Of a stretch of 47,992 bases of DNA, positions 18,118-44,296 are shown in pieces; positions within the stretch are counted from its first letter, which is position 1, and every line of letters begins with the position of its first letter. The position numbers and the translations under genes are program-made. Below the pieces are notes generated by a model, which saw only the letters and a list, made by a program, of their open reading frames with translations, ran no database searches and was not told the DNA's origin. The DNA comes from Octopus sinensis (Eukaryota). The DNA lies in assembly GCF_006345805.1 (NCBI RefSeq), contig NW_021834887.1, forward strand, positions 1-47,992, in the 5' to 3' direction.

Positions 18118-18223
18118 TTACTCAGTCTTTGCAGGTCTCTCTGCTGCAAATCGGATCAGTCTTTGAGCCAGAGTTGAACGTCTGATGTCGTCACTTGATA
18201 TGTCACTACGTTTTTTCTTGCCG
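18118..18223 (-). CDS. PTH-like neuropeptide precursor, last coding exon: (x)GKKKRSDISSDDIRRSTLAQRLIRFAAERPAKTE*
   Basis: Acceptor gtttctttacacttagttttacttacgattttag|C, phase 2. Open to TAA at 18120-18118, with a donor 12 nt after the stop. Begins with a Gly plus polybasic amidation/cleavage signal. Confidence 0.85.
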
Positions 18224-20899
18224 CTAAAATCGTAAGTAAAACTAAGTGTAAAGAAACCAGTGTAGGGAAAAAATGTCTGGTTACTAAAATTTTATCAAAT
18301 TAAGTGGAAAGATCTCGCCAGTAATTAATTTTAACTTTTCAAATCAAAAGCTGTTGGAAAGATGTGTGTTTGTGAGTTTGTGTGTGAGTGTGTGTGTGTG
18401 TGTACTTACCTCAAAAATATAACAGTGCAGCATCTCTTTTCTTAAATATAATTAATTGTTTAAGCTAAGATTACAAATTTATTACCAATTTATAACTACG
18501 GAACTAAGATTATGTTTATAGCTTACAAACGAAATCGAAACAGTATCATGAATTATGGACATTAATAAGTGATTATTATCTATAAAAAAAAACACTCGAT
18601 ATTGTTCAATTTTATAATCGTTATAGTTCACTGGATCGCCAACGAATGTTGTACTTTCCTGTTATTTGTGAAAGGTCTTTGCCTTAAGTTATAGAAGCCA
18701 ACCTGTAAAAGGGATATTAAGTTGCCCCTTTCCCCAGGAGACTCGAGATAACATCTTGGACAAATGGTAGCAATCTATCTAGGCTACTCATCTAGGTTTA
18801 TGCTGAATTCTAAAGCCAGGCAAAACTGTTGGACAAGTGTTATATATTCCCTTCAACTGTGGATTGAGGATGGTGGCTACTCTCAATATTGGTATTTTAA
18901 TATCAAGACACTAGGTACGACATTAGACCAATTCTCCCTCAATTCTCCTGATGCAATAGAATATCATTGTACTGTGTAAAAATGGAGCACTAATAGATTT
19001 ACTTGTCCTTCGCATCATTCATAGTAAGTCTGCTTACATCAACATATCAAAGCAGTAGCAGCGATCGACGGATGCTCTATTTCCGTTTTTCAAAGGCTTT
19101 TATTAGGCCGATTTGATAACTGTTTAGTTTTAAACGAAATGTAAAAGTATTACATGAAATAGAACCTACATTGCCAGCGCAACTTGCCAATTTTCGACTA
19201 TCTGTAGAATTTGCTATAATTTAAGTTCATTTTCATTTTTGGATGAGGTATTAACTTATGATCATAATTTCTGACTTGAATTCCTGAATCAGACAACATA
19301 TTACGAGTACCTGTTGCGTGCTAGTGCAATCCTCTCTTTTACTCCAGCTGTCACATCCCGGTTATTCCACCAGGTTAAGAATGAGAGGATTCCTCAAAGG
19401 ACTTCCCTGACTGCTCATGACAACCTAGGCACCGAAATCGACGAGCATACGCATGAATTACGTTACCAAGTCTTACTCGCACGTGAATGACGACTGGTTA
19501 CGTGAATGACAACTGCTGCAGCTATTGAACTTAATGTCAACCCTGATCGAATAGATCTTATCCGATGATAAGACGTGCTCCAGCATATGAAATTTTCTAG
19601 ATACAATATGTCTAGGACAGTATTATCTAATATGTTAGAACGCTTTCATTTAAGGGGGATTTGGCTACTATTTCTGATTTTATTTCCTTATTGTAAGGTT
19701 TTTTGAGACAGTGCTTCGCAATTTATTTTCAGAGATCGTTCAAAAATTACAGCTCATGGTGGAGATTTAAGTAGCATATATTATATTTTGTATTTTATAT
19801 ATAACTTGTTGAAATCGCAATATGTCAGGTCAGATGTGCATGAAAAAAATTACATTATTGAAACAATATATTTCTTGTTTCGTGCCATATTGAAAATCAT
19901 GATCAACATTTCATGAAAATTGCTGGCAAGTATTCATTGTTGTTCAATGAGTTACCACAGAGAATAGCGAGAAATTCTATTAAATTGAAGAGATTTCGGC
20001 TACCTTTCAATATTGAGTTAAACTAAATCTACACGAGTATAGCTGAGGGAACTATAACACTCTTATGGGTGATTGAGCTAACATTGACTGTCTCACTAAG
20101 AAAGCAATTGATAGAAAATGATCGGCTGTAATACCAATTATAGAAACAGGGTCCTGCTAACTCGCAAAATATAAAATACGACTATAAAATAATATGATAT
20201 ATAATATGATATATTAGTATATAATCTATATATGTTATATTAACATTATATGCATATATATATATATATGTGTGTGTGTGTCTGTGTGTGTGTATGTATA
20301 TATAATTATATTAATATCTCATATCTAATTTACTATAAAAATTACAATAGAATATAAAATAATTTCTTATATGTGTCTGAGCTTGTTATGCTTATGTTTA
20401 ACGATTTAGAAACTAGTGTTCAAGACTGTTAAATATAAACACGACAGGTACACACACATACACTTATATCTTCGCAATCATTCATAACTTGAGATTATAT
20501 ATTGTATAGCAATAAAAAATAAAATCTATTTTCCTTTAAGCAATTTTCTGTACTTCGAATATTTATTTATAATTCGATTAATTGTTGTACTTCGATCAAT
20601 GTGTTTTTTCTTCTCTCGAGTAACTGTTTTCGATCACGTGTATTTCAATCGTTTCCGGGAAAATTGACAAGCCGTTTATCTCAATGCTGATTTCATACAT
20701 CTTCTCTACTATCCGGATATTAGTTACTCTGTCTTGCAATGTATATTTAGTTAAGATAGAAAACTTTAAAGGGTTTCCCAACAAACCAATCGGATTAAGT
20801 GACATAATTTACTCAGCCACAACTACCACCAATACCACCACCTACACTACCACCACCACCACCACCGACGGCACCTCCACCACAGCTACTACTACTACA

Positions 20900-20942
<43 letters not shown>

Positions 20943-21766
20943 TCCTGTGGCGATTGTACCGATACTGCCAAGAGCTTTTGTATAGAAAGAGATAAGGATA
21001 TAGAAAATAATTCAATATTAATCACGAGATCGACCAAGTGCACAAAGTCATCATGTACGTGTATGTGTGTTTTATGCGCACATGTCTCTGTATGTGTTAT
21101 ATATAAGTGCGAACTTCAATTCAAAGACTGTTGTATGTATGTATTTTTGTAATTATGTATGTATGTATGTATGCATGTATGTATGTATTATATATGTATG
21201 TATGAATGCATGTATGTATGTATGAGCGCTTAACAAACCGTAAAACGGTCAGGCATGACACTTCTCTTTTGTTTCTCTGCGCATCACAGGTAGAGAAAAA
21301 TGTGTCTACATGCTAAATATTTCTCTTAAAGTCAGGTCCTCTAATATTTATATTTATTTCAGTGTTTCTGACTCATACTGTTTTATGCATATAATATCTG
21401 TTAAAGACGACTCGTCAAAAGCACAATTATATAAACTAAGCAATCCACCACAGTTATAGCCTAATTATACCTGCTTTATATAGCAGCTGATATTAGTGAT
21501 TGAAAACGAGTATATATCTTAGCGGAGAGGTCAACAATCCGTGAAATGATCATAAGAAAACTCCACTTAGATTTTCTGTTCATCGAAAGCATGGGACCCG
21601 GTTACATGAAAGGAAGAGCTTGAAATATAAAGAACTAGTTAGAAATGGCAGGGATAGAGGCCTTCTAACTGATGTGGGTTGCCATGGGTTAGCAGCTAGG
21701 TCTATTATGTCCTGCTTAGCTCATTTGCTTTTAGCTAGCTCTTGAGATAGAGTGGTAACTAATTTG

Positions 21767-21810
<44 letters not shown>

Positions 21811-21937
21811 TACAGCACATATGTGTTATTTATCTATCTATCTATCTATCTATATATATATATATATATATATGTTTACCGAATTTGTGTAATGTGTATA
21901 GAATAAATATATCAGTTATATAAACAATTGCATCGTG

Positions 21938-22121
21938 AGATGTTTGTAAGCCATTTAAGAACTCACAAAAACCGTTAGTTTCACTTCAACATTTAAATAC
22001 ACAAAATGTTGTCAATGAACAGGTCGCGGTTTGGAAGCGATGAAAATATTTTGACACAATTTAATTTAAATGTTGAAGTGAAACTGACGTTTTTTTTGGC
22101 CTAAATGGCTGACAGGCATCT
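21938..22121. mobile_element. MITE with about 55-60 bp imperfect TIRs
   Basis: agatgtttgtaagccattta...gtttcacttcaacatttaaat paired with atttaaatgttgaagtgaaac...taaatggctgacaggcatct. Confidence 0.75.
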
Positions 22122-22759
22122 TCCTCATTGCAATTGTTTTTGCTTCAGCACACGATCTTAGATCAATGTTACTTGCAATGCAGGTACATCTCCGTAGTGT
22201 GTGTGTGTGTCCTCTGACGTATTTTGTAATATGCATTCGTGCTTCTGTGAGTGTATGTTTGCATGGGAATTGTTAGATTTCAGAACACGTTTGCGAATGG
22301 TTGTGTATTCTAGTGTGTATGATATATATATATATAATATATTATATATATATATCTATATATATAATATATATATATATATAATATATATAATACATAC
22401 ATACATAATACATACTATATATATATATATCTATATATATATATATATATATATATACATACTACATACATACATACATACATACATACATACAATATAT
22501 ATTCATGCACATATATTATTAAGAGAATATCTTCTATAAAGCATTCGATTGTGAAAGACATTATCCATATAGAAAAAATTAAATATACTATAATATATAT
22601 ATTTTTAATCATAATTAAAGAAACATTAAACTGACTCCGCGCATTTGGGGACTATATCTTTAAATCGATAATGATAAAATCGATCTATTAAAATAAATTC
22701 GATTTAAAATGAATTCGATTTAAAAATTATGCCACTTTCAGTGGCTATATTAACAATAA

Positions 22760-23869
22760 TCTTTAGCCTTGAGAGTTCATGACCACCTTAGCCTTGTGAC
22801 ATGGGGTTGTCCTGCATGAATATGGGTGATCGCTTAGTTTTGAATTTCTCAGCACAGGCAAGACATGATCTTTTACAAGTGTTTTAAACTCCTGCATTTA
22901 CCTTCCATGTAATCGCACCAAAGGGCCCCACACCATCTCCAGATATCATCCCCCAAACCATGACACTTCCTCCACCGAATTTACACTAGTCTTAAGGCAT
23001 TTAGGCGACAATTTTTCACCTACTTTTTGACAAACGTACCTTTTCCCATCTGACCCAAATAACAAATTTAGATTCATCCCGGAAATGCACCCGTTTGCCA
23101 TTTTTCTTGAGACCACAACATATGTTCGGTTGCAAAGGTAAGACGACATTTTTTATTCTTGGAGCTGATTAGTGGCTTCACTGCAGGTGCTCTTGCTTGT
23201 AGGTCATGTTCAACTAAACGACAACACACAGTTTTTTCGAAATAAAGTTTTCTTCAGTACAATGCACATTTCCAGAGAAACAGCAGCAGCAGTTTTAAAT
23301 CTGTCCTTTTTAACCAACTTTACCATAGCACGATCTTCTCTGTTGGTCGTTTTTCATGGCCTACCTGTAGACTTTCTTGCTTCACACGAACCACAATCAT
23401 CGTAGACCTTAAGAATACCGTGAACAACACTTTTTCACTTGTTAACAATTTTGCAATAGACCCAATACTTAAATTATCCTTCTTTCGAAGCTTATAATCT
23501 GCTGACGAATTATAACGGAGTAAGTGGCATTATATTAACAAAGTACACTGCAGATACTCTTACTAATGTTTAGTAAATAAAACCGTCGAGTAAACAATTC
23601 AAAGCATTAGAGTTCACCGGTTAAATATAGTAAAACATGAAGTAAAAGCAAACGTTCTGATCATCTTGGCCGCCGTGGGTTTGGCAGTAAATCACTAAAT
23701 CATCCATACTTTTGTATTATCCTCTCAAATTACAACAAAATCTCAGACAATAACAATTAATATCGTATTTATTGTCTGTGAAAATTATAGAAAATAACCA
23801 GTTCTATTAAAATTATATCTACCTTTTCTGACAAAAACAATGCCGTTCTGAACATTTTGGCCGCAACTG
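22760..23869 (-). mobile_element. Tc1-like transposon, 3'-truncated, transposase pseudogene
   Basis: TA plus CAGTTGCGGCCAAAATG TIR at 23871-23853. Reading STGRP*KTTNREDRAMVKLVKKDRF...KPLISSKNKKCRLTFATEH...NLFGSDGKRYV...GGSVMVWGMISGDGVG...IFMQDN. Confidence 0.85.
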
Positions 23870-24104
23870 TATATACACGTTGAGGCTGTAAGTACGTACG
23901 CATGTTTGTACATATGCATGTGCGTTTTGTAAGTATGAATTTATGCATGTATATATATATGTCTTTACATATGTATGCATCTAAGTATGTCTGTATGAAT
24001 TACGTATGCACGCGTGTATTAATTATACATATATATGTATGTACGTATATATGTATGTATGTATCTATCTATGTATCTTCATGTATGTACACATATGTTG
24101 AAGC

Positions 24105-24871
24105 ACTGTGACGTTAGAGTTGGGTGCGTTAATTGTAAACATCTGCAAGGTGAAATATTGGAAGAGTGGCGAATGTAGCACATAAGGCACTCTTTAGAAC
24201 GTGTGAATATAGCGTAATTAGAGATAAGCTAAATCCGTTTTGACAAGATGTACATAGCATCACGGTAATATATAGAATACATAGCCATGCTATGCTGATA
24301 GGGTGTACGTTTACAGGGTGCTCTAAAAGTAACAAAAAAAGGATAAATCCATGTGTCACATGTGAAGAAACATGCCTTTGTCTTGGTGAACACGATGTAA
24401 TCAAACTTTGACGCAGTGAAACAATAAAAGATATTGAAAAAAAGGGGAAGAGCATGTAAAGAAACAGTACGGCTTGTCGTAGAATGAATAAGATTATTTA
24501 GAACAGAAATGAAATATCAAATTTTCAAAATGCATAGAGTAAAGAATTAAAGAGAATTACATACCATGAAAGGAACATTTGGACATGACGTAATATAAAT
24601 TGACATGATAAAAAAATAAAATATGAGACTTGACGAATGAAAAACATCACTAGACGACGTGGAATAAATAAGATACTTAAAGAAAAGTCACACGTGACGC
24701 ACTGAATACAATCCGGAAAATAACAGAAAAACAAAAATATATGGAACTAATTAACAGTCAGTTCATACTCCGAACAAAACAAGTTTACATCACACAAAGA
24801 AGATCCACGTTGTGGCATAGTGAACAGTTAGGTGTAACGCAGTGAAGCTGCATCATATATACAAATGTATG

Positions 24872-24902
<31 letters not shown>

Positions 24903-25790
24903 ACATGATGTTATGATACAATTTTTTGACGTAACAGAAAAGGACTGTGAAATACTTGGAAACGGCACACGGCGAAACGAAATTGTGACAGCGAGACAGT
25001 ACTTAGAATAAACATATTAACATAACGTCGTAGAAATATATCTACATAGACAACATGAAGTAGGATACAGTATTCTATAGTGTAGAGAAAAATGAAAGGT
25101 ATGATATGACGAAGGATGAATAAGACAGTGTAACTTAGTAACATAAGTGAAATTGTGCAAAAGATCAATGTAATAGAGTGAGGATAAGACGCAACATAGA
25201 TCAGTGTACATTGTAACGTAGAATACAGACGGGGACATCAAACGTGACGTGAGAGAAAAGAATTGATCCAATATCAATGCAACGGAAAATAGGTGATCAT
25301 CATAGCGTGACGAAGGTGCAATGATGAACATGACGGAACGTGGAAGAAACATAATGTACAGCACGGCGGGACGTAATAGAAATAATTTGATGTGCAATAG
25401 AACAGTGATCGGCAGTGAGACGAAGAAAGAACAAATGAACGTAACGCAGAGAATTACCTTCGGCATAATGTAGCAAACAGCGTTTGATGAAAAATATACG
25501 TAATAACAATACAGTATGACGTAAAATATACGAGATGAGGTGACGTAGAATCAGGAACAGCACGTTAATACGTATGAAAAATGATAGAACATAACGTACA
25601 AAAGAACAATCTTGGTGTGACGTAATGATCCACGGTGTTTGACGAAGAATAAAACTGTACCAAACGTATAGTAAAAAACAACACACCCTAACGAATTAAA
25701 CAGTCACACCGTGACGTATAACACACAGCACGGCACAGTGTGACAACAGACGAACACTGTGTGATTTCTTGACGGACAGTACGACTATGA
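24105..25790. repeat. Highly decayed pentanucleotide (ACGTA/ACATA/ACGAA-like) array
   Basis: Recurrent acgta, acgtg, acata, acgga, acgaa and acaga words in register, with strong A bias. It produces hydrophobic junk ORFs on the minus strand. Confidence 0.55.
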
Positions 25791-25828
25791 GTGTAGCGCT
25801 GATGACAGAGAACATTTCGAATACCTAC

Positions 25829-25927
25829 ATTTCAGCAAAGTCAAATTGGCCATGACCAGCCACTTTGCTCATGGCCTTAAGAGCTCTTAATTCGGCTATC
25901 CTCTGGTCGAAGGATGTCCGTTTACCG
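25829..25927 (-). CDS. PTH-like precursor peptide exon 3: (x)GKR-TSFDQRIAELRALKAMSKVAGHGQFDFAE(I)
   Basis: Acceptor aaatttctgattttacttcag|C and donor AAT|GTAGGT; 99 bp, phase 2-2. The DQRxAEL...GxG..D...IG pattern matches what I recall of the iPTH/PXXXamide family. Confidence 0.9.
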
Positions 25928-26006
25928 CTGAAGTAAAATCAGAAATTTCATTTAAGAAAGACTCCAAAGAAATACACACTGACGAACCTCGTAGAAACAG
26001 ACTCAC

Positions 26007-26061
<55 letters not shown>

Positions 26062-26302
26062 AACGCACACGCACACACATACACGCAATCACAGATACAC
26101 ACGCATGTGTATGTACATACATATATACAATATATTTAATATTAAATCTATATAACAATACATATGTAATTTGTATTATTACATATTATATATGTATACA
26201 CACACACACATATGCACACATTTACATCCATACACGCTCACACACAGGAACACGCATATAAATATATACATACACACACAAACACACACACATATATATA
26301 TA

Positions 26303-27142
26303 CAGTGTGCAGTGAATAAATTGTCGTCTAAATTACGAAAAAATGAAAGTAACACTGACATCTCATTTTAATAGATATATTGACCAAAATTACATAGACT
26401 TTCTTGACATACTAAAGAATAGATTATTTAACAAAATCGCCATTAGCTTCAACCATGGCCCCCAGACAACTTCGGAATCTCCTGCAACTCTCCTGGACGA
26501 TCACCTTTTTTAAGTTGGTGAATGCTGCCATGATCCTTCCCTTTAGTTCATCTTTGGTGTTACAAGGAGTTTTGTTGGCCTCTCGGTCAAATGCACCCCA
26601 CACGTAATAATTAAGACGGTTGTAGTCTCGGAAGTTATGTGGCCAGATATTTGGGGTGATGGGGTCGCAGAAATTGTCCTGCCTATATGGTATGGTGTAG
26701 TATCGTGTTGCCAGACATATGGTCTCCTAGATGTCACCCGCTTCACCCAGGGCAGCACTAGCTCCTCCAGGCACTTAATGTAGGCCTTTCGTGTTGAGTC
26801 TGAGGCCCCGTGGGATGATGAATGGAGGCGTAAGCTCGCCGTCACTAGCGATCACTCCAAACACCATGATGTTGACTAGATGTTTGATTTTTATCGCTCT
26901 CAGTACATGTCCTCAGATTGACACACAAACACTCTGAAATGTTCCTATTGGAGCTTCTGGCACGAATGTCAAACAGTACAGCATGTCGTTTCCAAATTTC
27001 AGGGAGAGTGAATTGCGTCATAGTGCTGTTTTTCCCACAGACGGTGCCCAACTGATCCTACTATACTGTGTAGTCGATAAAATTAAAAACGAACTATGCG
27101 AATGCTCGAACTTAAAACTATATAGTGGCGACAATTTACTCA

Positions 27143-27148
<6 letters not shown>
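26303..27148 (-). mobile_element. Internally deleted Tc1/mariner-superfamily (DD37D/maT-like) transposon
   Basis: Imperfect TIRs (ta-cagtgtgcagtgaataaattgtcg / cgacaatttactcatctgtg-ta). Reading NIMVFGVIASDG..PPF..GLRLNTKAYIKCLEELVLPWVKRV..RPYVWQHD; the N-terminal HTH joins directly to the catalytic region. Confidence 0.8.
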
Positions 27149-27213
<65 letters not shown>

Positions 27214-27225
27214 TCACTCACGCGC

Positions 27226-27287
<62 letters not shown>

Positions 27288-32813: not shown

Positions 32814-32933
32814 CTGGCGTTTATATCGACTACCCCACAGGCAACCTCGACACAACCCGGTGGTACAGTGCCAATAAGTGCTAACCATGCTTGGTATTCA
32901 GCTGTTTTAACATCGCCTGTCTGGCGCTTCGAT
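32814..32933 (-). CDS. PTH-like precursor cassette exon 2b: (x)SKR-QTGDVKTAEYQAWLALIGTVPPGCVEVACGVVDINA(S)
   Basis: Acceptor gtgttgttttacctatttacag|A and donor CAG|GTACAG; 120 bp, phase 2-2. Dibasic site, N-terminal Gln and C-x4-C motif; paralogous to exons 2a and 3. Confidence 0.9.
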
Positions 32934-33851: not shown

Positions 33852-33965
33852 CTCTTTTCAATATCAACTAACCCACACGCTACCTGGGTGCAGGTAATGT
33901 TTCTGGACAATGCCATCAGTGCCCGATACTCAGCCGCTCGCATATCAGCTAGCTGTCGTTTAAAT
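33852..33965 (-). CDS. PTH-like precursor cassette exon 2a: (x)FKR-QLADMRAAEYRALMALSRNITCTQVACGLVDIEK(S/R)
   Basis: Acceptor atttctacaacccctgcttacag|A and donor GAG|GTATAG; 114 bp, phase 2-2. Clear protein similarity to exon 2b (KRQxxD..AEY.A..AL....C..VACG.VDI). Confidence 0.88.
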
Positions 33966-34228
33966 CTGTAAGCAGGGGTTGTAGAAATGCATGCATTACA
34001 TAAGGTGTTCTGTTACATATTCTCTTTATATCATACATAGCTTGAACACTTTTCAAAAATATGATCCATATACCGAAATATATTTTTATGTCAAAATTGA
34101 ATCCATTACTTTTCATACAGTGTCTGACTTAACGAGAATTGTTTATAGTTGCTAAGCCTGGACCACTGCACAAATTAGCTTAACAGTCTGTGGGTTACGT
34201 AACATTTTCTACTTAGCTAATGGATACC

Positions 34229-34459
34229 TATTTTTTTATTACCCACAAGGGGCCAAACACAGAGGGAACAAACAAGGACAGACATAGGTATTAAGTCGAT
34301 TACATCGACCCCAGTGTGTAACTGGTACTTAATTTATCGACTCCGAAAGGATGAAAGGCAAAGTCGACCTCGGCGGAATTTGAACTCACAACGTAACGCA
34401 GACGAAATACCGCCAAGCATTTCGCCCGGCGTGCTAACGTTTCTGTCAGCTCGCCGCCT
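34229..34459 (-). mobile_element. tRNA-derived SINE (family 2)
   Basis: Minus-strand head aggcggcgagctgacagaaacgttagc...gagttcaaattccgcc, followed by the gtcgactttgcctttcatcctttcgg core. Confidence 0.85.
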
Positions 34460-34520
34460 TAGCTAATGGATAACATTTACTTAACTCATCAACCCTGTTC
34501 TCGGTGCTAGTCACTTAAGC

Positions 34521-34557
34521 AGACGCTGACGAGGGCGAGACAGCTTGAAGCTCGTCT
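34521..34557 (+). ncRNA. Degenerate minimal hammerhead-like motif
   Basis: AGACG-CTGACGA-GGGC-gagaca-GCTT-GAA-GCT-CGTCT. Intact CUGACGA and a 5-bp stem I, but the GAAA/NUH segment is one base short. Confidence 0.35.
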
Positions 34558-37500: not shown

Positions 37501-37769
37501 TTTATATATCCTAATTCTCGTTCGGGATGTTTAGCTTAACGGTAAAGCACTTGACACTTGACAGGGATGTGAATTCGAGTCTCATGGCTGGACACCGACA
37601 GATTTTTCTGTATAATGTCGATAGTTTATCCTGTTCATTCTATATTAATAGGATTATCCTGCGTCTGAGAATAAAATTATTTCCTTATCTGTATCTTTCA
37701 AACATCTCAACGCTTCTAAAGCAAACTTTGTTGACATTCAACGTAAGTTGAATTTAATATATACATATT

Positions 37770-38275
37770 TTTTTTTTTTTCAGTCATTTGAAAGCGGCCA
37801 TGCTGAAGCACCGCCTTTAATCGAACAAATCGACCCCAGGACTTATTCTTTGTAAGCCTAGTACTTAATCTAACTGCCTGAACCCGGAACCATGTGGTTG
37901 GTAGACAAGCTACTTACCACACAGCCGCGCTGTATGAGTTTGTATTATATATATAGAGAGAGAGGGATATAGATAGACAGACAGACAGACAGATAAATAT
38001 ATACATACATACATACATACATATACAACATACGTATATATATATACATATACATATATGTGTGTGTCTATGTATGTGTCTTTGTATTTATACTCTACCA
38101 TCGCTTTACAGCCAGTGTTGGTTTGTTTACGCCCCTGTTAATTAATGGTTCAGCCTAAGAGACCGATAGAATAAGTAGCAGACTTTTAAAAAAGATAAGC
38201 ACTTCGGTCGAGTGGTGCGGCTAAACCCTTCAAGGTGGTGCCCCAATATGGCCGCAGTTAAATGACTGAAAAATT
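37770..38275. mobile_element. Two SINE family 1 fragments in opposite orientation (about 37780-37930 minus; about 38100-38275 plus)
   Basis: Matches to the 3' half of 8678-9084. The first fragment is fused to a head fragment. Confidence 0.7.
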
Positions 38276-38828
38276 TAATATCAAGAATGTTCCAACTTAC
38301 TATAAGAAAGATTTTAGTTACTTTGTTCCTGACTTCGTGTTAGCTAATTCACACTGGTTACCGAATACTGGGTCATTGTTTGCTTTCTCTCATATGTTTT
38401 AACGATGCGTTTCTTAATTCCTCAACTAATCTTATGTTCACTTTAATTTGGCTTTGTAAGGCAGGTAAAGAAAAAAAGTAATGTCGGAGCTTTCCCTGTC
38501 TTGATATAAAGGCTATATCGAGCATAAGGATTAGCTGAATAAATAAACACATATATTTGACTGGTACTTTATCAATCAGGTTGGATGAAAAGCAATGATG
38601 AACTCAGTAGGGTTTGAAATCAAAATGTAAAGTATTTTGTTCAAAGTTCAAACGATTCTTGGAATTCACTGCAAGTTTCATCTTATATTATAGATTTTAT
38701 AATTTATTATTTTACATTAAAAATTGTATTAGTATTTAGAGTAATCTCTCGACTATCACAGGTGTTACGTTCTAAAACCCCGGCGATAGGTGAAAATACT
38801 TGAAGTAGAAACAGTACACTACCGTATA

Positions 38829-39191
38829 TTTTTACCTCCGCCTTCGCTAAGGCGGAGTTATTGTTTTCAGTCATGTTAGTTTGTTTGCTTTGTTTGTCTG
38901 TGGACAAGATATCTCAAGAATCGCTGGGTGGATTCGGATGAAAATTTTAGGGATGATTGGCATTGTGACTGGCACGAACTGATTAGATTTTGGGATCGAT
39001 CCGGTACCGGACAAGGATTCTGAATTTTTTTCTGGTCTTTTACTTAATTTATGAGAGCGGTCGTGTTCATTTTTAGTATTCTCGTTTGTGAGAGCAGTCG
39101 AGTTTATTTCACATATTCGCATTTTAAAAATCATCTTTGGCTAATCGTTGAGAGGACGCTGGTGTTGCCTTGGCGGAGGTTTGTGCTCTAG
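38829..39191 (+). mobile_element. Non-autonomous element with subterminal inverted repeats (Helentron/HINE-like architecture)
   Basis: acctccgcc at the 5' end and ggcggaggt at the 3' end; 5' hairpin ctccgcctt-cgct-aaggcggag; gttt/gtct repeat near the 5' end. Confidence 0.55.
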
Positions 39192-39350
39192 TATGTATAT
39201 ATATTTTTTATTACGAATGCAAAACAACACCACTGAGGAATCAACGTAAGATTGAATAATAAACCGCGATAGGTGAATCGCTATATGGTGAGGGATTACT
39301 GTATTTAAATTTCTTTGCTTACAAATATCTTATTTACGAATTATTATTTT

Positions 39351-40646
39351 GTTTTTATCACAGGTTTTGTTGAAGCGCCCCCTGAAGTCTTGCATGCATA
39401 GCGGGCTTGCTACCTACAGCGTACGGGACCATGCTATTCGTTCTTTCCAGGTATCTAATACTTTCCTGATTATTCTGGCCGTGCCAAGCAGGCAAACCTT
39501 TTGTAACAGTTCCACTGGGCACTCTATTCCAATTTCCTTTATATTCCTCTTGATGCCTTCTGATACTGTTCCCAAGGATCCAACAATAATTTGCATTATC
39601 TGCACCTTCTTCCGTTTCCACAGCCGGGTTAAGAGGGTTGTATTTATCTAACTTTTCGCTTTCCTTCTGGACTATTCGGGGAACAAAGGGGCATGCAACT
39701 TCAACTATATAGAATATGTGGTACATGTCGTCCACCACCACTAGGTCCGGTCTGTTCTGCTCTAGCCCCTGATCTGTTGGATTGGGAAATACCAAGGGAT
39801 TTTGCTAGTCTCCAGTTCCACTACTCTGTACAGTTTGTGTCCATATCAAGTCTTGCCTCTCTCTAGCCCCCACTTTTCACACTTTCGCTACCTGATTGTG
39901 TCGTCACCCCTTGTAGTGGTTTTGGAAAGTCTAGGGCATTCGATCGTGATATGGTCAATGGTTTCATCCACTCTATTGCAGATGCAGCACAGCGGTTTGA
40001 CCCTCCAGTTCGTGACCAGATCGTGGTTTTGAGCTACCGCTATAGTACTCTCGGTCTCTTTTTTTAGGGTTCCTTTCATCAGCGAATCCTACCTATTTTT
40101 TCCAGCAACTTCTCTAGTAGCTACATATAATTGATTGTGTAGTCCCCTGCGTAATTCTTCTTCATATCCTTTTTCCCCTTCATCCTTTGTTTTCCATTTT
40201 TACTCTGCTCTCAATAATCCCTCGTTCCAATCTATCACTAAAAAGGTTTCCTCACTTTGGGCTAGGCATCTCATTAAGCTCTCGAGTTCGATACGCACGC
40301 AGTCTTCCATACTCACCGGTCCCCTTCCTCCATTTGCTCTTTTCATGTATAGGCAATCAGTGTCTGCACGTGGATGATGGGCTCCATGCATCGTTAGGAG
40401 CTTTCTTGACTTTCAATCCATCTCCTTTAGCTCCTCTGTCCACTTCGGGATTCCAGCACCATAGCGAACTACTATGACTGTTCGTGAGTTTATTGCCGAA
40501 ATGCTTCTAGCATTCAGCTTTGAAGTCAATATTTTTCTCATTTGCCGCAAGTACTCTCCTTTTGTCTTTTCCTTTATGATGTGGTGTTTGATTCTATCTG
40601 CCTCAAGTATTGCCAGGTTGAATTGCCTTCATTATTTCACCTCGAG
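39351..40646 (-). mobile_element. RLE non-LTR retrotransposon (R4/Dong-like), copy A, 5'-truncated
   Basis: HHPRADTDCLYMKRANGGRG, CCICNRVDETIDHITIECP (CCHC knuckle), NRPDLVVVD..IVEVACPF..QKESEKLDKY (RLE), IIVGSLGTV..LLQKVCLLGTARIIRKVL. Confidence 0.9.
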
Positions 40647-40647
40647 T

Positions 40648-40674
40648 TTATTATTATTATTATTATTATTGTTG

Positions 40675-40737
<63 letters not shown>
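40648..40737. repeat. (TTA)n tract between RLE copies A and B
   Basis: Visible directly. Equivalent tracts lie at 42747-42813, 43272-43357 and 43801-about 43897. Confidence 0.95.
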
Positions 40738-40739
<2 letters not shown>

Positions 40740-42745
40740 TTTGTACAGATTCTAACGCTGGAAATGTACTACCGTGTCAGCTGTTCGCTACCAGTGTACT
40801 AAGGTAATTCCCCTTATTTTTCGAGCACCTTCCGGAGTTTTCGAGCGGTTCCAAGCAGTGCTGTTTTCTGCAAGTGTTCCAACCTTATTGTAGCCCTATC
40901 TGTTCCATGTATTTGATTTTTTTACACACTGTTCCCAGGGCTCCGACAATTATTGGTACCACTACCACCTTTTTCATTAATCACAATTTCTTTACCTCCC
41001 AAGCTAACCTATCATATCTATCGACTTTTCTTTCTTTGGCTAATCGTTGAGAGGACGCTGGTGTTGCCTTGGCCTAGGTTTGTGCTCTAGTATGTATATA
41101 TATTTTTTATTACGAATGCAAAACAACACCACAGAGGAATCGACGTAAGCTTGAATAATAAACCGCGATAGGTGAATCGCGATATGGTGAGGGATTACTG
41201 TATTTAAATTATCGCATACCTTCTTGTCAGCTGGGTATGCTATATCTATGATCCAGCATAGTTTGGTTTCTTTCTCTATTAAGACTATGTCTGACTTCCT
41301 ATTCTCTGTCTTATGGTCACACTGAATCATAAAATCCCACGGGATCTTTGCATTATCATTTTCGATTATGCCTTCGGTGTTGTGGTCGTACCAATTATTT
41401 CTCTGTGAAGTCCATACTTGTTGCAAAGTTTGCAATGGACAAGCCTTGCTATATTGTCGTGGCGTCTCTTATATTCCTTCAGGGTTAGTGGCATACATTG
41501 GCTGGTAATATGCCATACGGTTTCACCGTTTTGTCTACAAATTCTGCATTTATCACTTTCTGATGTGTTGTTTACTCTGTATTTTATGTAGTTTATTCTT
41601 TGTGCTTGCTCTTGGACAGCACAGATTAGAGCCTCCGTTTTAAATCATTATATGTCATCCACAGCCATCATTTTTCTCTGTCTGTCTTATCTTTAACATC
41701 CCTATAAAATTGTCCATGCATTCTTTTCTTTACCAATCTATTTTCAGTTTCAATCGTTTTCAATTGATTGTACAATGCTTTATCTTTGCAATCTTTCATC
41801 CTACACAAGGCTGACCTTCTTACTTCTCATAATAGCGTTTCTGTGGCATTTTTTTACATACCATTCTATGTTGTTTTCTTCTGTTGTAATGCTGTGTTCG
41901 CATCCAATAAGTCCTCTTCCCCCTCTTTTTCTTGGTACATACAGTCTGCCTGTGTCACTTTTTGGGTAGAGTGTCCCATATCTAGTTAGCAACTTCCTTG
42001 TCTTTCTGTCTAAGCTGCTTAGTTCGTCTACTGTCCATGCGATCACCCATGCTCCATATCTAAGGAGTGAAACTGCCCAGGTGTTGACAGCTTCAATCTT
42101 ATTCTGTCCATTTAATTTCAACTTAAGGATCAGTCTCAGTCTGCGCAAGTACTCCACTTGAAACTTTTCTGTAGTTTCTTTCTCCATCAATTCATCCATT
42201 TCCAAAATTCCCAAATACTTATAGCCCGTCTCTTCTATCTGCTCCATAACCTCCCCCGACGGTATCGATAGCCCGTCCATACATTTGATTTTGCCTCTCT
42301 TCAAGACTAACACACCACACTTTCTCAGTCCGAACTCCATTCTGACATCAGCACTGAAAATATACATCGTATCAACGAGGGAATTGACTTGGGTTTCATC
42401 TTTATCATAAAGTTTGAGATCATCTATGAATAACGAATGGTTGCCTTTTTGTTGGCGGCTTTTGAATACATACCCAGCTTTTGCTTTCCTCAGCATCAGT
42501 GTTAGTGGTATCAAGCACAGTACAAAGATCAGTGAGAACGGGCAGCCCTCCTGGAAGATGCCCCTCCTGATTTCTACTGTCCCTAAACTTCTTCCGTATG
42601 CTCTTAGGGCCGTCCTCCAATTCGCCATACTTTTTCCAAGCAATCGCTCAAAATTCCATTATCCAAGTGATCTTATCGTACGCCTTACGATAGTCGGTCC
42701 ATGACATGGCTAAGTTACTTTTCCTCCTCTTGAAGTCTCTAAGTA

Positions 42746-42746
<1 letters not shown>
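40738..42746 (-). mobile_element. RLE non-LTR retrotransposon (R4/Dong-like), copy B, truncated within RT
   Basis: WTDYRKAYD, RRGIFQ, NHSLFIDDLKLY, YKYLGILE, LYVPRKRGGRGLIGCE, a CCHC region, IPWDFMIQCDH..KSDIVLIEK..IIDIAYP, and PIIVGALGTV..LQKTALLGTARKLRKVLEK*. Confidence 0.92.
41033..41210 (+). repeat. 178-bp locally templated insertion copied from 39134-39311
   Basis: Collinear with about 6 substitutions. It interrupts the RLE domain of copy B between ...KKVCD and KE.KVDRY. Confidence 0.9.
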
Positions 42747-42813
<67 letters not shown>

Positions 42814-42814
<1 letters not shown>

Positions 42815-43271
42815 TTTTTTTTTCTTCTTTCAAATTTGCTTCCATTTCTTGCCGAGTGTCTTCCCGACTCCTAGGGCAAAGAAACTCATAGTATACATTG
42901 GTAGGCCATTAAACCAAACTCAATAGTCGTTCATTTTTTGAAATTTTTGTTTTTTAAGTTATATTAAAATACATGAGCAGCAACAGTTCTCACATCGACA
43001 ATGCTCTTCTCAATACGTGTGATGTACCAGTTAAGACAATCTTTTGCACTTCTTGCAGGGATGGTAAGCCAGGGATCATTCTCATATAATTTTCGGTTCC
43101 CTTCTTGATTATTCCTAGTGCTCCTACGATCACTGGTATTGTAACCGCCTTGAGATGCCACATTTTCTCAATTTCAATGAGTAGGTCTTTATATTTTCTG
43201 AGCTTGTCAAACTCTTTCGCTGAGATATTATGATCACAGGGGATGCTCATGTCGATCAATAAGCAAACTTT
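42814..43271 (-). mobile_element. RLE non-LTR retrotransposon (R4/Dong-like), copy C, 3' end only
   Basis: IDMSIPCDHNISAKEFDKLRKYKDLLIEIEKMWHLKAVTIPVIVGALG...QKIVLTGTSHVLRRALSM* plus 3' UTR. Confidence 0.9.
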
Positions 43272-43277
43272 TTATTA

Positions 43278-43308
<31 letters not shown>

Positions 43309-43357
43309 TTTTTTTTTTTTTATAATTATTATTATTATTATCATTATTATTATTATT

Positions 43358-43798
43358 GTTCAGTAGTTTTATTTTTATAGCGTGCTTTCACTTCACTACC
43401 GAGCGCAGCTCTGTGTGCCTTGGGTATGTGCTGTGATTTGTTGTGATGCTCTGATGGTTATTGTATGGAAAGCGTTCTGCGTAGGATGTGTGCAGTGCCT
43501 AGTAGTGCAATTTTCTGTATGTTATATGTGTTTGTAAGTCCTGGTGTTTTTGTTATGTATTTGTCTGAATATTTTTTTATCATGCCTAATGCACCTACTA
43601 TGATAGGAATTGTTTCTGTTTTCAGGTTCCACATTCTAGTTACCTCTATTTCCAGGTCTTTGTATTTTGAGAGTTCCTCCATTTCTTTTAGAGACACGTT
43701 GTCATCTGTCGGTATTGATACATCAATTAGAAAGCATTTTTTTTCTTCATGATCTCTGACAACTATATCTGGTCTGTTGGCCTTAATTTCTCTATCTG

Positions 43799-43800
<2 letters not shown>
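43358..43800 (-). mobile_element. RLE non-LTR retrotransposon (R4/Dong-like), copy D, 3' end only
   Basis: RPDIVVRDHEEKKCFLIDVSIPTDDNVSLKEMEELSKYKDLEIEVTRMWNLKTETIPIIVGALG...QKIALLGTAHILRRTLSIQ* plus 3' UTR. Confidence 0.9.
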
Positions 43801-43852
<52 letters not shown>

Positions 43853-44207
43853 TATTATTATTATTGTTGTTGTTATTATTAGTAGTAGTATTGTTATTTT
43901 ATATTAGTTTTGTCTATATTATATTTTACGAATCTTGGAAACAAGTGGCGCTTAGCGTTTAATAATTATTAACTGCTAAGCACCACTTGATTCCCCGAAT
44001 CCGAATTTTCTCTATATATTGTGCGTAAGAGATGTGATTAATTACAACAAGCTATCGCGTTAATTAAAACAAAGTTAAATGTATCATGTGTGGGAATTTT
44101 AAAATGATCTACACGTTTCTGTATAACAACGACTTGCAATAATTTTTATGAAAGCAATCTTTTAATTATGACGTTATTAAAAATATTTCAATATAAAAAT
44201 TGCTTAC

Positions 44208-44296
44208 TTCAATTCTTCTTCTGGGATATATCGTGCATTTACAAGAGAAACTAGCACCATGCCAACAATGCTAAGTATTAAAATGTGTCGTGTCAT
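44208..44296 (-). CDS. PTH-like precursor first coding exon, signal peptide: MTRHILILSIVGMVLVSLVNA-RYIPEEEL(K)
   Basis: Acceptor cttctctcatttgatttcag directly precedes ATG; donor GAA|GTAAGC; 89 bp, ending phase 2. Basic N-region, hydrophobic core and V-N-A cleavage motif. The phase matches all downstream exons. Confidence 0.85.

What the first reader, a model, noticed from the sequence alone, without database searches (positions are those of the whole stretch)
18118..44296. Hidden multi-peptide parathyroid-hormone-like (iPTH/PXXXamide family) neuropeptide gene
Five short exons, only one of them partly visible in the ORF track, have canonical splice sites and join in frame. They give a secreted precursor with signal peptide, KR sites and three homologous peptides: pQLADMRAAEYRALMALSRNITCTQVACGLVDIEKS-amide (35 aa), pQTGDVKTAEYQAWLALIGTVPPGCVEVACGVVDINAS-amide (37 aa) and TSFDQRIAELRALKAMSKVAGHGQFDFAEI-amide (30 aa). 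The third carries the DQRxAEL...GxG.xD..IG motif I recall for insect iPTH and cuttlefish PXXXamide, the ligands of invertebrate PTH-receptor-like class B GPCRs. The insect precursors I recall carry one such peptide, so three copies in one gene is notable. Whether this locus is already annotated is unknown to me.
Basis: partly seen in the sequence, partly recalled or inferred. Interest (0 to 1): 0.9.

Follow-up and report, generated by a model that had tools for sequence, protein, structure and literature searches.

The report
Duplicate octopus PTH-like neuropeptide gene
The window holds a real five-exon octopus gene for parathyroid-hormone-like (QSamide/PXXXamide, "iPTH") neuropeptides, but the family and its three alternative peptide exons were already published for octopus in 2020, so what is new is only that this is a second, faster-changing copy that databases still call "uncharacterized".

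Summary
Profiles built only from non-octopus sequences pick out exactly these three peptide exons among 2052 open segments: Cys-loop "QSamide-type" E2b 7e-21 and E2a 3e-15; PXXXamide/iPTH-type E3 3e-10, and 3e-6 with an arthropod-only profile.

The family call is right, but the gene is neither hidden nor new in kind. The window is an unplaced Octopus sinensis scaffold carrying RefSeq LOC118761766 (XP_036355813.1, exons 1+2a+4, "uncharacterized"). Xie et al. 2020 (S1 Table) already list three O. bimaculoides transcripts with these same three cassettes, one per transcript, and likewise for Sepia, Lottia, Crassostrea, annelids and a termite. An oyster study describes the same alternative splicing with mass-spectrometry support.

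New here: this is a second paralogue of chromosomal LOC115211866, with an orthologue in O. vulgaris. It shows gene conversion, 10 amino-acid-changing versus 1 silent difference between species, and a Gly that would allow two amidated peptides from tandem-cassette transcripts. Receptor pairing and splice usage remain inferred.

The parts
44208..44296 (-). Coding exon 1. ATG at 44296; encodes MTRHILILSIVGMVLVSLVNA|RYIPEEEL, i.e. the signal peptide plus a short spacer. It ends with 2 nt (AA) of a split codon. An acceptor (tttcag) lies directly before the ATG, so at least one non-coding exon should lie upstream.
   Evidence: Hydrophobic core with mean Kyte-Doolittle 3.03, V at -3 and A at -1. 98.9% identical in O. 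vulgaris and in the C5 paralogue.
33852..33965 (-). Cassette exon 2a. Encodes (K)FKR + QLADMRAAEYRALMALSRNITCTQVACGLVDIEK, with the final S completed by the next exon. This is a Cys-loop 'QSamide-type' peptide (C-x4-C) and is the only cassette in the RefSeq model.
   Evidence: Non-octopus Cys-loop profile E=2.7e-15; PXXXamide profile 2.1e-7. 100% identical to the C5 paralogue. Present in P0003 = XP_036355813.1.
32814..32933 (-). Cassette exon 2b. Encodes (K/R)SKR + QTGDVKTAEYQAWLALIGTVPPGCVEVACGVVDINA(S), a second Cys-loop peptide. It is the orthologue of Sepia 'gene 1 transcript 2' and O. bimaculoides 'transcript 2'. Not in any annotated product of this locus.
   Evidence: Cys-loop profile E=7e-21. 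Comparison with S1 Table of Xie et al.. The haplotig C8327 carries the C5-type allele of just this exon.
25829..25927 (-). Cassette exon 3. Encodes (S/N)GKR + TSFDQRIAELRALKAMSKVAGHGQFDFAE(I), the iPTH/PXXXamide-type peptide. Not in any annotated product of this locus. It starts with C|GGT AAA CGG, so a preceding cassette would end in ...S-G-K-R.
   Evidence: Lophotrochozoan PXXXamide profile E=3.1e-10; arthropod iPTH profile 3e-6. 98% identical to O. vulgaris and 84.8% to the C5 paralogue.
18118..18223 (-). Last coding exon (CDS part). Its first base completes S or I, then GKKKR gives the shared amidation and cleavage signal. The conserved C-terminal peptide SDISSDDIRRSTLAQRLIRFAAERPAKTE and the stop TAA (18120-18118) follow. 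AATAAA/ATTAAA motifs at about 17761 and 17735 are candidate poly(A) signals.
   Evidence: 100% identical in C8327 and C11597, 99% in O. vulgaris, 96% in C5. The C-terminal region aligns across molluscs and is the best-predicted helix in the AlphaFold model.

Best explanation
The window is an unplaced 47,992-bp scaffold of the Octopus sinensis assembly. On its minus strand it carries a complete QSamide/PXXXamide (invertebrate 'iPTH') neuropeptide-precursor gene, RefSeq LOC118761766. The gene is modular. Exon 1 gives the signal peptide. Exons 2a, 2b and 3 are self-contained cassettes, each starting with its own basic cleavage site (FKR, SKR, GKR) and encoding one peptide. Exon 4 supplies, for whichever cassette precedes it, the last residue plus Gly-Lys-Lys-Lys-Arg (amidation and cleavage), followed by a conserved C-terminal helix. 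All cassettes share one phase and have lengths divisible by three, so the gene can make several precursors by alternative cassette use. These are most likely mainly one cassette per mRNA, with some tandem forms. Expected products are two disulphide-looped peptides with an N-terminal pyroglutamate and a C-terminal Ser-amide, and one linear 30-residue Ile-amide peptide of the iPTH/PXXXamide type. They presumably act on 'Cluster B' (PTH/glucagon/secretin-like) class-B GPCRs. This locus is not the gene already published for O. bimaculoides. It is a second paralogue of it; the other O. sinensis copy is LOC115211866 on chromosome contig C5. The duplication is older than the O. sinensis / O. vulgaris split, and its 5' half has been partly homogenised by gene conversion. 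SHOWN: exons, phases, conserved splice sites, family homology, paralogy, gene conversion. INFERRED: signal-peptide cleavage, pGlu, disulphide, amidation, which cassette combinations are spliced, and the receptor.
For: Gene model. Identity of the window and its annotation: P0003 lies on a 47,992-bp contig and is XP_036355813.1, LOC118761766; the window is G000:C11358. Family: independent profiles hit only the three cassettes. An alignment search returns 67 relatives in molluscs, annelids and a nemertean with invariant DQRIAEL..AL..HGQ..IG. Published precedent: S1 Table of Xie et al. 2020 lists O. bimaculoides transcripts 1/2/3 as E1+E2a+E4, E1+E2b+E4 and E1+E3+E4, and the same design in Sepia, Lottia, Crassostrea, Phoronis, Lingula, annelids and Zootermopsis. 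The oyster QSamide3/PXXXamide gene shows complex differential splicing, with peptides seen by MS. A 1041-nt RNA-assembly contig encodes the Sepia-type E1+E3+E4 precursor uninterrupted. Paralogy: the same five exons lie at C5:126,794,702-126,823,420. O. vulgaris has a complete window-type copy at OX597818.1 about 125.67-125.70 Mb, plus a C5-type model P0005 on the same chromosome. Substitution-only intron divergence is 0.8-1.3% between window and O. vulgaris, 0.4% between window and C8327, and between window and C5 it is 1.4% in the 5' half and 8.0% in the 3' half. Three distinct versions (C5, window, C8327) in one assembly need at least two loci. Gene conversion: C8327 is window-like at 534 of 559 informative sites, with a C5-like tract only over E2b. 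Receptor side: beetle iPTH activates iPTHR1/2 with EC50 of 63 and 413 nM. Cluster B receptors are reported in molluscs, with O. bimaculoides among the genomes searched. The genome here encodes several secretin-type receptor exons. Weak structural support: helices are predicted over the N-terminal halves of both cassettes and over the C-terminal peptide, at mean pLDDT 57.
Against: No RNA or peptide data for this locus could be examined. The only annotated product uses one of the three cassettes. The conserved Ser of the family's 'SD' motif is Phe here (TSFDQR), in both O. sinensis haplotypes. The Pro that gave PXXXamide its name is absent (…FDFAEI-amide). Between O. sinensis and O. vulgaris the CDS differs by 10 non-synonymous and 1 synonymous change, so there is no sign of purifying selection. 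The haplotig C8327 has a 1-bp deletion in E3. No lophotrochozoan receptor has been deorphanised with these peptides. My attempt to identify a PTHR-type receptor in this genome was inconclusive.
Confidence: 0.82

Rival explanations
1. Tandem-cassette mRNAs (E1+E2a+E3+E4, 135 aa; E1+E2b+E3+E4, 137 aa; or all five exons, 175 aa) yield two or three bioactive peptides from one precursor.
For: All combinations are in frame. RefSeq models of the sister locus and of other octopods are tandem: P0001 (O. sinensis, E2a+E3), P0002 (O. bimaculoides, E2b+E3), P0028 (Argonauta, E2b+E3). An oyster transcript with two cassettes was marked 'found'. In this paralogue and its O. vulgaris orthologue, E3 begins with Gly-Lys-Arg, so an upstream cassette would still end in S-G-K-R and be amidated. 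The C5 copy (SVKR), Argonauta (NRTKR), chiton, Capitella and oysters lack that Gly.
Against: The RefSeq product of this very locus has one cassette (P0003). Xie et al. list one cassette per octopus and Sepia transcript. A Sepia-type RNA contig has E3 only. None of the tandem isoforms of this locus is on record. E2a followed by E2b would destroy the amidation site of peptide 1 (…DIEK-RSKR).
Confidence: 0.3
2. The window copy is a redundant duplicate drifting towards loss. It is structurally intact but no longer under selection, so its E2b and E3 peptides are not made or not needed.
For: 10 non-synonymous versus 1 synonymous difference from the O. vulgaris orthologue (pN 0.025, pS 0.008). Cassette exons diverge at least as fast as introns: 2.7% versus 0.8-1.3%. 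The family's conserved Ser is replaced (SFDQR). There is a frameshift allele of E3 on C8327. RefSeq skips E3 and E2b.
Against: After a duplication about ten times older than the species split (8.0% versus 0.8% intron divergence), both species keep an open frame, all ten splice sites, every basic site, both Cys pairs and all amidation glycines. The single-base deletion could be a long-read assembly error. The numbers are small.
Confidence: 0.2
3. The scaffold is only an alternative haplotype (haplotig) of LOC115211866, not a separate gene.
For: It is an unplaced scaffold, collinear with C5:126.768-126.827 Mb over essentially its whole length at 92-97% BLAST identity. E2a is 100% identical.
Against: Intron divergence of 8% in the 3' half is about 20 times the divergence between the true haplotigs (0.4%). 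The assembly holds three distinct versions (C5, window, C8327). O. vulgaris carries both types on one chromosome, and its window-type copy is 0.8-1.3% from this window.
Confidence: 0.06
4. The precursor belongs to the corticotropin-releasing-factor / DH44 family, as an automatic UniRef name suggests for a 64-aa O. bimaculoides E1+E4 product and for the Capitella homologue.
For: UniRef names of P0053 and P0047. The shared C-terminal region is a predicted amphipathic helix.
Against: Pfam gives no CRF hit, and no hit at all, for six family members at E<=10. There is also none for the 175-aa product at E<=0.1. The C-terminal peptide lacks an amidation signal. The peptide cassettes match iPTH/PXXXamide profiles strongly.
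Confidence: 0.03

Closest known systems
Octopus bimaculoides iPTH/PXXXamide gene (LOC106873782), transcripts 1-3 in S1 Table of Xie et al. 2020, PLoS Genet (PMC7224569), and its O. sinensis orthologue LOC115211866
   Same: Same five-exon layout, same signal peptide, and the same three cassettes (QLADMRAAEY…, QTGD[IV]KTAEY…, TS[SF]DQRIAEL…) with the same shared GKKKR + C-terminal exon.
   Different: It is a different locus, a paralogue. E3 is 84.8% identical at DNA level, with 9 of 33 residues different. E3 starts GKR instead of VKR. E4 has 3 residue changes. Intron divergence in the 3' half is 8%. No paper found names this second copy.
Sepia officinalis PXXXamide precursor (Zatylny-Gaudin et al. 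2016; 'gene 1' transcripts 1 and 2 in Xie et al. S1 Table)
   Same: Founding member of the family. Signal peptide MTRN…, E3-type cassette TSSDQRIAELQALIALSNTIGHGQVNPEEI-amide, E2b-type cassette QTGDLKAAAYQAWLALGRTLPPDCPEVACGVVDVEAS-amide, and a common GKKKR tail. An RNA contig confirms the single-cassette form.
   Different: Only two cassettes are listed for Sepia, with no E2a type. Sepia keeps the Pro at -4; the octopus peptides do not.
Crassostrea gigas QSamide3/PXXXamide gene (Realis-Doyelle et al. 2021, PMC8398477)
   Same: One gene with a Cys-loop QSamide cassette and PXXXamide cassettes, used by alternative splicing, including a tandem form in which the first peptide loses its amidation. 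Peptides were detected by MS.
   Different: The oyster has one Cys-loop and two PXXXamide cassettes, whereas the octopus has two Cys-loop and one PXXXamide. Oyster tandem junctions lack the Gly seen here.
Tribolium castaneum iPTH and its receptors iPTHR1/2 (Xie et al. 2020)
   Same: Same peptide family by profile (arthropod-only profile against E3, E=3e-6). Same precursor logic: signal peptide, dibasic site, peptide, G + basic residues, C-terminal extension.
   Different: Insect genes mostly encode one peptide. The receptor pairing (EC50 63 and 413 nM) has been shown only there.
Vertebrate parathyroid hormone / PTHrP / TIP39
   Same: Only the receptor clade: iPTHRs and mollusc Cluster B receptors are homologues of the PTH/glucagon/secretin receptors. 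Ligands are presumably helical.
   Different: No detectable sequence similarity. Xie et al. report under 12% identity, and Pfam finds no family in these precursors. 'PTH-like' is a receptor-based name, not a demonstrated ligand homology.

Membership tests
iPTH / PXXXamide peptide family (Zatylny-Gaudin 2016; Xie 2020) | Precursor with an N-terminal signal peptide and a basic cleavage site directly before the peptide | tested here: met
   MTRHILILSIVGMVLVSLVNA|R…; hydrophobic core with KD mean 3.03, V at -3 and A at -1. GKR precedes TSFDQR…. No dedicated signal-peptide predictor was available.
iPTH / PXXXamide peptide family (Zatylny-Gaudin 2016; Xie 2020) | Conserved N-terminal core S-D-Q-R-[ILMV]-A-E-[LI]-x-[AT]-L | tested here: met
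   E3 has F-D-Q-R-I-A-E-L-R-A-L. Profile of non-octopus lophotrochozoan peptides E=3.1e-10; arthropod-only profile E=3e-6; both are the top hit among 2052 segments. Deviation: the 'highly conserved' Ser is Phe in O. sinensis but Ser in O. vulgaris.
iPTH / PXXXamide peptide family (Zatylny-Gaudin 2016; Xie 2020) | [quoted passage not shown] | tested here: met
   …FDFAE-I-G-K-K-K-R is formed across the E3/E4 junction (AT|C GGC AAG AAA AAA CGT).
iPTH / PXXXamide peptide family (Zatylny-Gaudin 2016; Xie 2020) | Pro at position -4 from the amidated C-terminus (the PXXXamide signature) | tested here: not met
   The peptide ends D-F-A-E-I-amide; the C5 copy ends D-V-D-A-I and Argonauta D-F-D-D-I. Xie et al. 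state that this Pro is only 'mildly conserved', so this is a naming feature rather than a family-defining one.
iPTH / PXXXamide peptide family (Zatylny-Gaudin 2016; Xie 2020) | Peptide activates a PTHR-type (Cluster B) class-B GPCR | not testable with these tools
   Shown only for Tribolium and stated as unproven in Lophotrochozoa. Secretin-type receptor exons exist in this genome, but a single exon could not separate PTH-type from calcitonin- or secretin-type.
iPTH / PXXXamide peptide family (Zatylny-Gaudin 2016; Xie 2020) | Mature amidated peptide present in nervous tissue (mass spectrometry) | not testable with these tools
   Reported for Sepia and oyster in the literature. No data for this locus.
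QSamide / QSGamide-type Cys-loop peptides (Conzelmann 2013; Realis-Doyelle 2021; Thiel 2021) | KR-Q N-terminus, helix-like x-D-x-[KR]-x-x-E-[YL] core, C-x4-C-G-[LV]-[VI]-D loop, C-terminal Ser-Gly + basic residues | tested here: met
   E2a is FKR-QLADMRAAEY…CTQVACGLVDIEK-S-G. E2b is SKR-QTGDVKTAEY…CVEVACGVVDINA-S-G. Non-octopus profile gives E=2.7e-15 and 7e-21, with no other segment below E=1.5.
QSamide / QSGamide-type Cys-loop peptides (Conzelmann 2013; Realis-Doyelle 2021; Thiel 2021) | Encoded as an alternative cassette in the same gene as a PXXXamide cassette, sharing signal peptide and C-terminal exon | tested here: inconclusive
   The genomic arrangement and equal phases are met. Actual alternative use at this locus is supported only by one RefSeq model (E1+E2a+E4) and by analogy to published transcripts. 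No reads could be examined.
Vertebrate parathyroid hormone family | Sequence similarity to PTH/PTHrP/TIP39 (a Pfam family would be expected to match) | tested here: not met
   No Pfam family matches any of six precursors at E<=10, nor the 175-aa product at E<=0.1. Xie et al. report under 12% identity.
CRF / DH44 / urocortin family | Match to the CRF domain; C-terminally amidated peptide of about 40 residues | tested here: not met
   No Pfam CRF hit for P0053, P0047, P0003, P0001, P0012 or P0021. The labelled region (E4) ends …AKTE-stop with no Gly.

The most novel reading that the evidence does not exclude
In the Octopus vulgaris/sinensis lineage the ancestral QSamide/PXXXamide (iPTH) gene exists as two full paralogues, and the copy in this window has taken on a new role. 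Its mature-peptide cassettes change faster than its introns, and all cassette changes alter amino acids. Its PXXXamide cassette has diverged most in the C-terminal, presumably receptor-selecting half. A Gly gained at the start of that cassette lets tandem-cassette mRNAs release two fully amidated ligands at once. It would then be a lineage-specific diversification of class-B GPCR ligands matching the mollusc expansion of Cluster B receptors, or possibly a recruitment to a non-neural secretory tissue.
Probability: 0.2. Interest if true: 0.4.

Novelty: new member of a known kind. Interest (0 to 1): 0.2.

Why it matters
The practical value is mostly in annotation. Across molluscs, public databases label this family "uncharacterized", or occasionally mislabel it as CRF-domain. 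At this locus two of the three peptide exons, including the iPTH-type one, are in no annotated product. Octopus therefore has at least two genes and up to six distinct predicted ligands of this family. That matters to anyone trying to deorphanise the expanded Cluster-B (PTH/glucagon/secretin-like) receptors of cephalopods, where no ligand-receptor pair has yet been shown. The paralogue pair also gives a small, clean example of exon-scale gene conversion and of unequal divergence of alternative cassettes within one neuropeptide gene. It does not change what is known about the family's architecture, which was published in 2020-2021.

Tried and rejected
1. Fourth hidden cassette: three family profiles against all 2052 stop-to-stop segments of at least 15 aa found nothing beyond E2a, E2b and E3.
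2. Pfam on the 175-aa product and six relatives: no family. The CRF label was not reproduced.
3. RNA evidence for octopus splice forms: exact look-ups of seven further window and C5 isoforms were not on record. Two homology searches returned no octopus RNA-assembly ORFs. The partial Logan hits were genomic exon read-throughs from other species.
4. Positive selection: cassettes versus the nearest 11 kb of introns gave p=0.002. With all introns it fell to p=0.05, and to p=0.23 without E2a, which may be converted. I do not claim it.
5. Receptor: the top Pfam 7tm_2 hits in the genome were an intronless cluster on C10 and an adhesion-type exon family. Three secretin-type TM3 exons matched calcitonin, secretin and PTH receptors almost equally, so orthology is unresolved.
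6. Amphipathic-helix test by hydrophobic moment was marginal: 0.03-0.09 of shuffles reached the observed value. AlphaFold gave low confidence, mean pLDDT 57.
7. A bacterial promoter/terminator scan upstream of E1 is not applicable to a eukaryote and gave no more hits than chance.
8. Rfam and tRNA scans of the window found nothing.
9. The position of the C5-type gene in O. vulgaris could not be obtained because the gene model spans 103 kb and no DNA was returned.

Full report
OBSERVATION. Reading the flanks gives five coding exons with canonical borders:
- E1, 44296-44208: the ATG comes directly after an acceptor tttcag; the donor is gtaagc.
- E2a, 33965-33852.
- E2b, 32933-32814.
- E3, 25927-25829.
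- E4, 18223-18118: ends in TAA.

E1 ends two bases into a codon and every later exon starts with one base. The three middle exons are 114, 120 and 99 nt long. Every combination is therefore in frame.

IS IT MORE THAN CHANCE? I built profiles from published peptides of other phyla and classes, leaving out every octopus sequence. I searched them against all 2052 stop-to-stop segments of at least 15 codons in the six frames of the window.
- The Cys-loop profile hits E2b (7e-21) and E2a (2.7e-15) and nothing else below E=1.5.
- The PXXXamide profile hits E3 (3.1e-10), and also E2a (2.1e-7) and E2b (1.8e-3), which shows that the three cassettes are homologous to each other.
- A profile made only of arthropod iPTH peptides, the clade in which the receptor was deorphanised, again ranks E3 first (3e-6) and E2a second (3.7e-3).
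- There is no fourth cassette.
- All ten splice sites are conserved in the paralogue and in O. vulgaris.

WHAT THE WINDOW IS. The best protein hits show that the window is a 47,992-bp unplaced scaffold of Octopus sinensis, contig C11358 of a 2.72-Gb assembly. It already carries a RefSeq gene, LOC118761766 / XP_036355813.1, named "uncharacterized protein". That 102-aa product is E1+E2a+E4. So the gene is not hidden, but E2b and E3 (the iPTH-type cassette) are in no annotated product of this locus. None of the other possible isoforms is on record.

WHAT IS ALREADY KNOWN. PXXXamide was described in Sepia officinalis in 2016. Xie et al. 2020 showed that its insect orthologue activates the beetle PTH-receptor orthologues (EC50 63 and 413 nM) and renamed it iPTH.

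Their S1 Table lists "Octopus bimaculoides transcript 1, 2, 3". These are E1+E2a+E4, E1+E2b+E4 and E1+E3+E4, with the same three peptides as here, one cassette per transcript. The table shows the same design for:
- Sepia (two transcripts);
- Lottia (three);
- Crassostrea (four, some marked "transcript found", one with two cassettes in tandem);
- Phoronis, Lingula, Pomatoceros and Capitella;
- a termite.

Realis-Doyelle et al. [quoted passage not shown] Thiel et al. 2021 equate iPTH/PXXXamide with the older QSGamide family. They stress that the receptor pairing is still unproven in Lophotrochozoa.

The feature it found notable, several homologous peptides in one gene, is the published norm for lophotrochozoans. 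Peptides 1 and 2 belong to the Cys-loop QSamide-type branch and peptide 3 to the PXXXamide/iPTH branch.

My alignment search finds 67 relatives in bivalves, gastropods, a chiton, Argonauta, Capitella and a nemertean. Nearly all are named "uncharacterized". Many gene models string two or three cassettes in tandem.

HOW THE GENE WORKS (sequence-based, processing inferred). E1 encodes a typical signal peptide. Each cassette brings its own upstream basic site: K-FKR, K-SKR and N/S-GKR. E4 completes the last residue of whichever cassette precedes it (AG|C = Ser, AT|C = Ile). It then supplies Gly-Lys-Lys-Lys-Arg, the amidation and cleavage signal, followed by a 29-residue C-terminal peptide that is conserved across molluscs.

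This is the layout expected if cassettes are used as alternatives, and several lines fit that:
- the RefSeq model of this locus (one cassette);
- the published octopus and Sepia transcripts;
- a 1041-nt RNA-assembly contig that encodes the Sepia-type E1+E3+E4 precursor without interruption.

Tandem use is not excluded. RefSeq models of the sister locus (P0001), of O. bimaculoides (P0002) and of Argonauta (P0028) join a Cys-loop cassette to E3.

One detail is specific to this paralogue and its O. vulgaris orthologue. E3 begins C|GGT AAA CGG, so an upstream cassette would end in …S-G-K-R and stay amidated. The C5 copy has S-V-K-R, and Argonauta, chiton, Capitella and oysters also lack the Gly.

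AlphaFold on the tandem-type family gives a low-confidence model (mean pLDDT 57). It predicts helices over the conserved N-terminal halves of both peptides and, with the best confidence, over the C-terminal peptide. That is only weak support for the helical-ligand picture.

A SECOND PARALOGUE. The same five exons occur on chromosome contig C5 at 126,794,702-126,823,420 (LOC115211866). Two more scaffolds, C8327 and C11597, match the window at 98-99% over 16-30 kb.

Substitution-only intron divergence:
- window vs C8327: 0.40%, i.e. allelic;
- window vs the O. vulgaris locus L011 (OX597818.1, about 125.67-125.70 Mb, which holds all five exons): 0.8-1.3%;
- window vs C5: 1.4% upstream of E2b but 8.0% downstream.

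The collinear similarity to C5 extends to at least window position 5150. Three distinct versions in one assembly, and both types on one O. vulgaris chromosome (P0004 window-type, P0005 C5-type), argue for two loci rather than a haplotig.

The duplication is roughly ten times older than the O. sinensis / O. vulgaris split. The window-type E3 shares states with Argonauta (K-V-A-G-H-G-x-F-D-F). The C5-type E3 shares its derived states with O. bimaculoides. This suggests the duplication also predates the O. bimaculoides split, which is an inference from few sites.

The nearly identical 5' halves point to gene conversion: E2a is 100% identical between the paralogues, and O. sinensis-specific Asn is present in both. 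A direct trace is seen in C8327. It is window-like at 534 of 559 informative sites and C5-like only in a short tract exactly over E2b.

CONSTRAINT. Between the window and its O. vulgaris orthologue the 528-nt CDS differs at 11 sites, 10 of them non-synonymous (pN 0.025, pS 0.008). Nine of the 11 lie in the three cassettes.
- Against the neighbouring 11 kb of introns the cassettes are significantly faster (2.7% vs 0.81%, p=0.002).
- Against all introns the excess is marginal (1.34%, p=0.05), and it is lost if E2a, which may be converted, is left out (p=0.23).
- Between the paralogues, E3 has pN 0.165 against 8% intron divergence (p about 0.01).

I therefore claim only that purifying selection is not detectable. 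Diversifying selection and relaxed constraint both remain possible.

Against decay: the frame, all splice sites, basic sites, Cys pairs and amidation glycines are intact in both species.

For decay: the family's conserved Ser is Phe in O. sinensis (TSFDQR), and C8327 carries a 1-bp deletion in E3, which may be an assembly error.

RECEPTOR STEP. This is inferred. Cardoso et al. 2020 report expanded "Cluster B" receptors (homologues of PTH/glucagon/secretin receptors; the beetle iPTHR2 was one of their queries) in molluscs, and searched the O. bimaculoides genome.

In this genome, Pfam 7tm_2 finds 98 matches. The strongest are a cluster of intronless ORFs on C10 and an adhesion-type exon family. 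Several short exons have the secretin-type TM3 signature. Three of them match solved calcitonin, secretin, PTH2 and PTH1 receptors within about 50-fold in E-value. So class-B1 hormone receptors are present, but PTHR-type orthology was not resolved.

RIVAL FAMILY LABEL. UniRef calls a 64-aa O. bimaculoides E1+E4 product and the Capitella homologue "Corticotropin-releasing factor domain-containing". Pfam finds no CRF domain, and no domain at all, in six family members at E<=10. Vertebrate PTH similarity is likewise absent. "PTH-like" refers to the receptor, not to the ligand sequence.

VERDICT. The family call is correct. The gene is annotated but unnamed and incompletely modelled. Its architecture was published in 2020-2021, including for an octopus.

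What is new is modest:
- a second, complete paralogue shared by O. sinensis and O. vulgaris;
- exon-scale gene conversion between the copies;
- fast, almost exclusively amino-acid-changing divergence of its peptides;
- a Gly that would make tandem-cassette products doubly amidated.

No paper in the searchable library mentions these loci. Interest is low (0.2), and the novelty class is a new member of a known kind.

Noticed in passing
window 13961-16307: A 2.3-kb block of degenerate tandem repeats with a 23-bp unit (AAAATTTTCCCCAAAAATTTTTG; also scored as 45/46/68-bp periods). It lies about 2 kb downstream of the gene's stop codon. Its copies also explain many of the long spurious ORFs there.
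   Followed up: partly
window 41801-42658 (-), also 43458-43898, 41040-41468, 39358-39804 (-): Intron 1 contains open frames that look like remnants of a retroelement. The 285-aa frame has a weak, sub-threshold match to reverse transcriptase RVT_1 (E=0.004, 17 bits against a cut-off of 29.6). The others have no Pfam match. Intron 1 is about 2.7 kb longer here than in O. vulgaris.
   Followed up: partly
G000:C8327:18128-18225 (L018), equivalent to window 25927-25829: The near-identical scaffold C8327 has a 1-bp deletion in exon E3 (TTAAGAGCT becomes TTAGAGCT). It frameshifts the iPTH-type cassette into a stop. This is either a null allele or a long-read assembly error.
   Followed up: partly
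window 32941-32821 versus C8327 and C5: C8327 is window-like at 534 of 559 sites that distinguish the window from C5, but it carries the C5 version at 7 consecutive sites exactly over exon E2b. This looks like a short gene-conversion tract between the paralogues, giving two alleles of peptide 2 at this locus.
   Followed up: yes
window 33900-33892 (E2a, codons N-I-T): In O. sinensis both paralogues have Asn in …SRNITC…, which creates an N-x-T glycosylation sequon inside peptide 1. O. vulgaris and O. bimaculoides have Lys there.
   Followed up: no
window 18118-18205 (E4) and homologues: The C-terminal peptide after GKKKR (SDISSDDIRRSTLAQRLIRFAAERPAKTE) is shared by all isoforms. It is alignable across molluscs (…R..L…L….AAE…) and is the most confidently predicted helix (pLDDT about 71). 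An E1+E4-only O. bimaculoides product (P0053) exists in UniRef under a CRF-domain name that Pfam does not reproduce. Its role (sorting signal, or a further peptide) is unknown.
   Followed up: partly
window 44297-44308: The start codon is directly preceded by a conserved splice acceptor: tttcag|ATG here and in O. vulgaris, ttttag|ATG on C5. The gene should therefore have at least one upstream non-coding exon, which I did not locate. It may lie beyond the scaffold end.
   Followed up: no
window 5150-6900: This stretch contains an interspersed repeat with at least 40 copies at 69-76% identity on many chromosomes. The paralogous copy at C5:126,768,632-126,770,436 is 94% identical.
   Followed up: no
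G000:C10:79.83-80.58 Mb (L024-L051): A dense cluster of more than 30 intronless ORFs of about 550-730 aa, each with a full-length 7tm_2 (family-B GPCR) domain. Elsewhere there is a dispersed family of adhesion-type GPCR exons (CSCWL…FNTLQGxFIF). Both were seen while looking for the receptor.
   Followed up: no
L011 (O. vulgaris OX597818.1:125,667,544-125,697,974): The O. vulgaris annotation mis-models both paralogues. P0004 joins E2a+E2b+E3 to non-homologous first and last exons and lacks the signal peptide and E4. P0005 spans 103 kb and has a 69-residue spurious N-terminus before E1+E2b+E4. All five proper exons of the window-type copy are intact in L011.
   Followed up: partly
Xie et al. 2020 S1 Table (literature): The O. 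bimaculoides sequences printed there lack single residues relative to the RefSeq protein: MTRHILISIVG versus MTRHILILSIVG, and RIAEKALL versus RIAELKALL. These look like transcription slips and could defeat exact-match searches.
   Followed up: no
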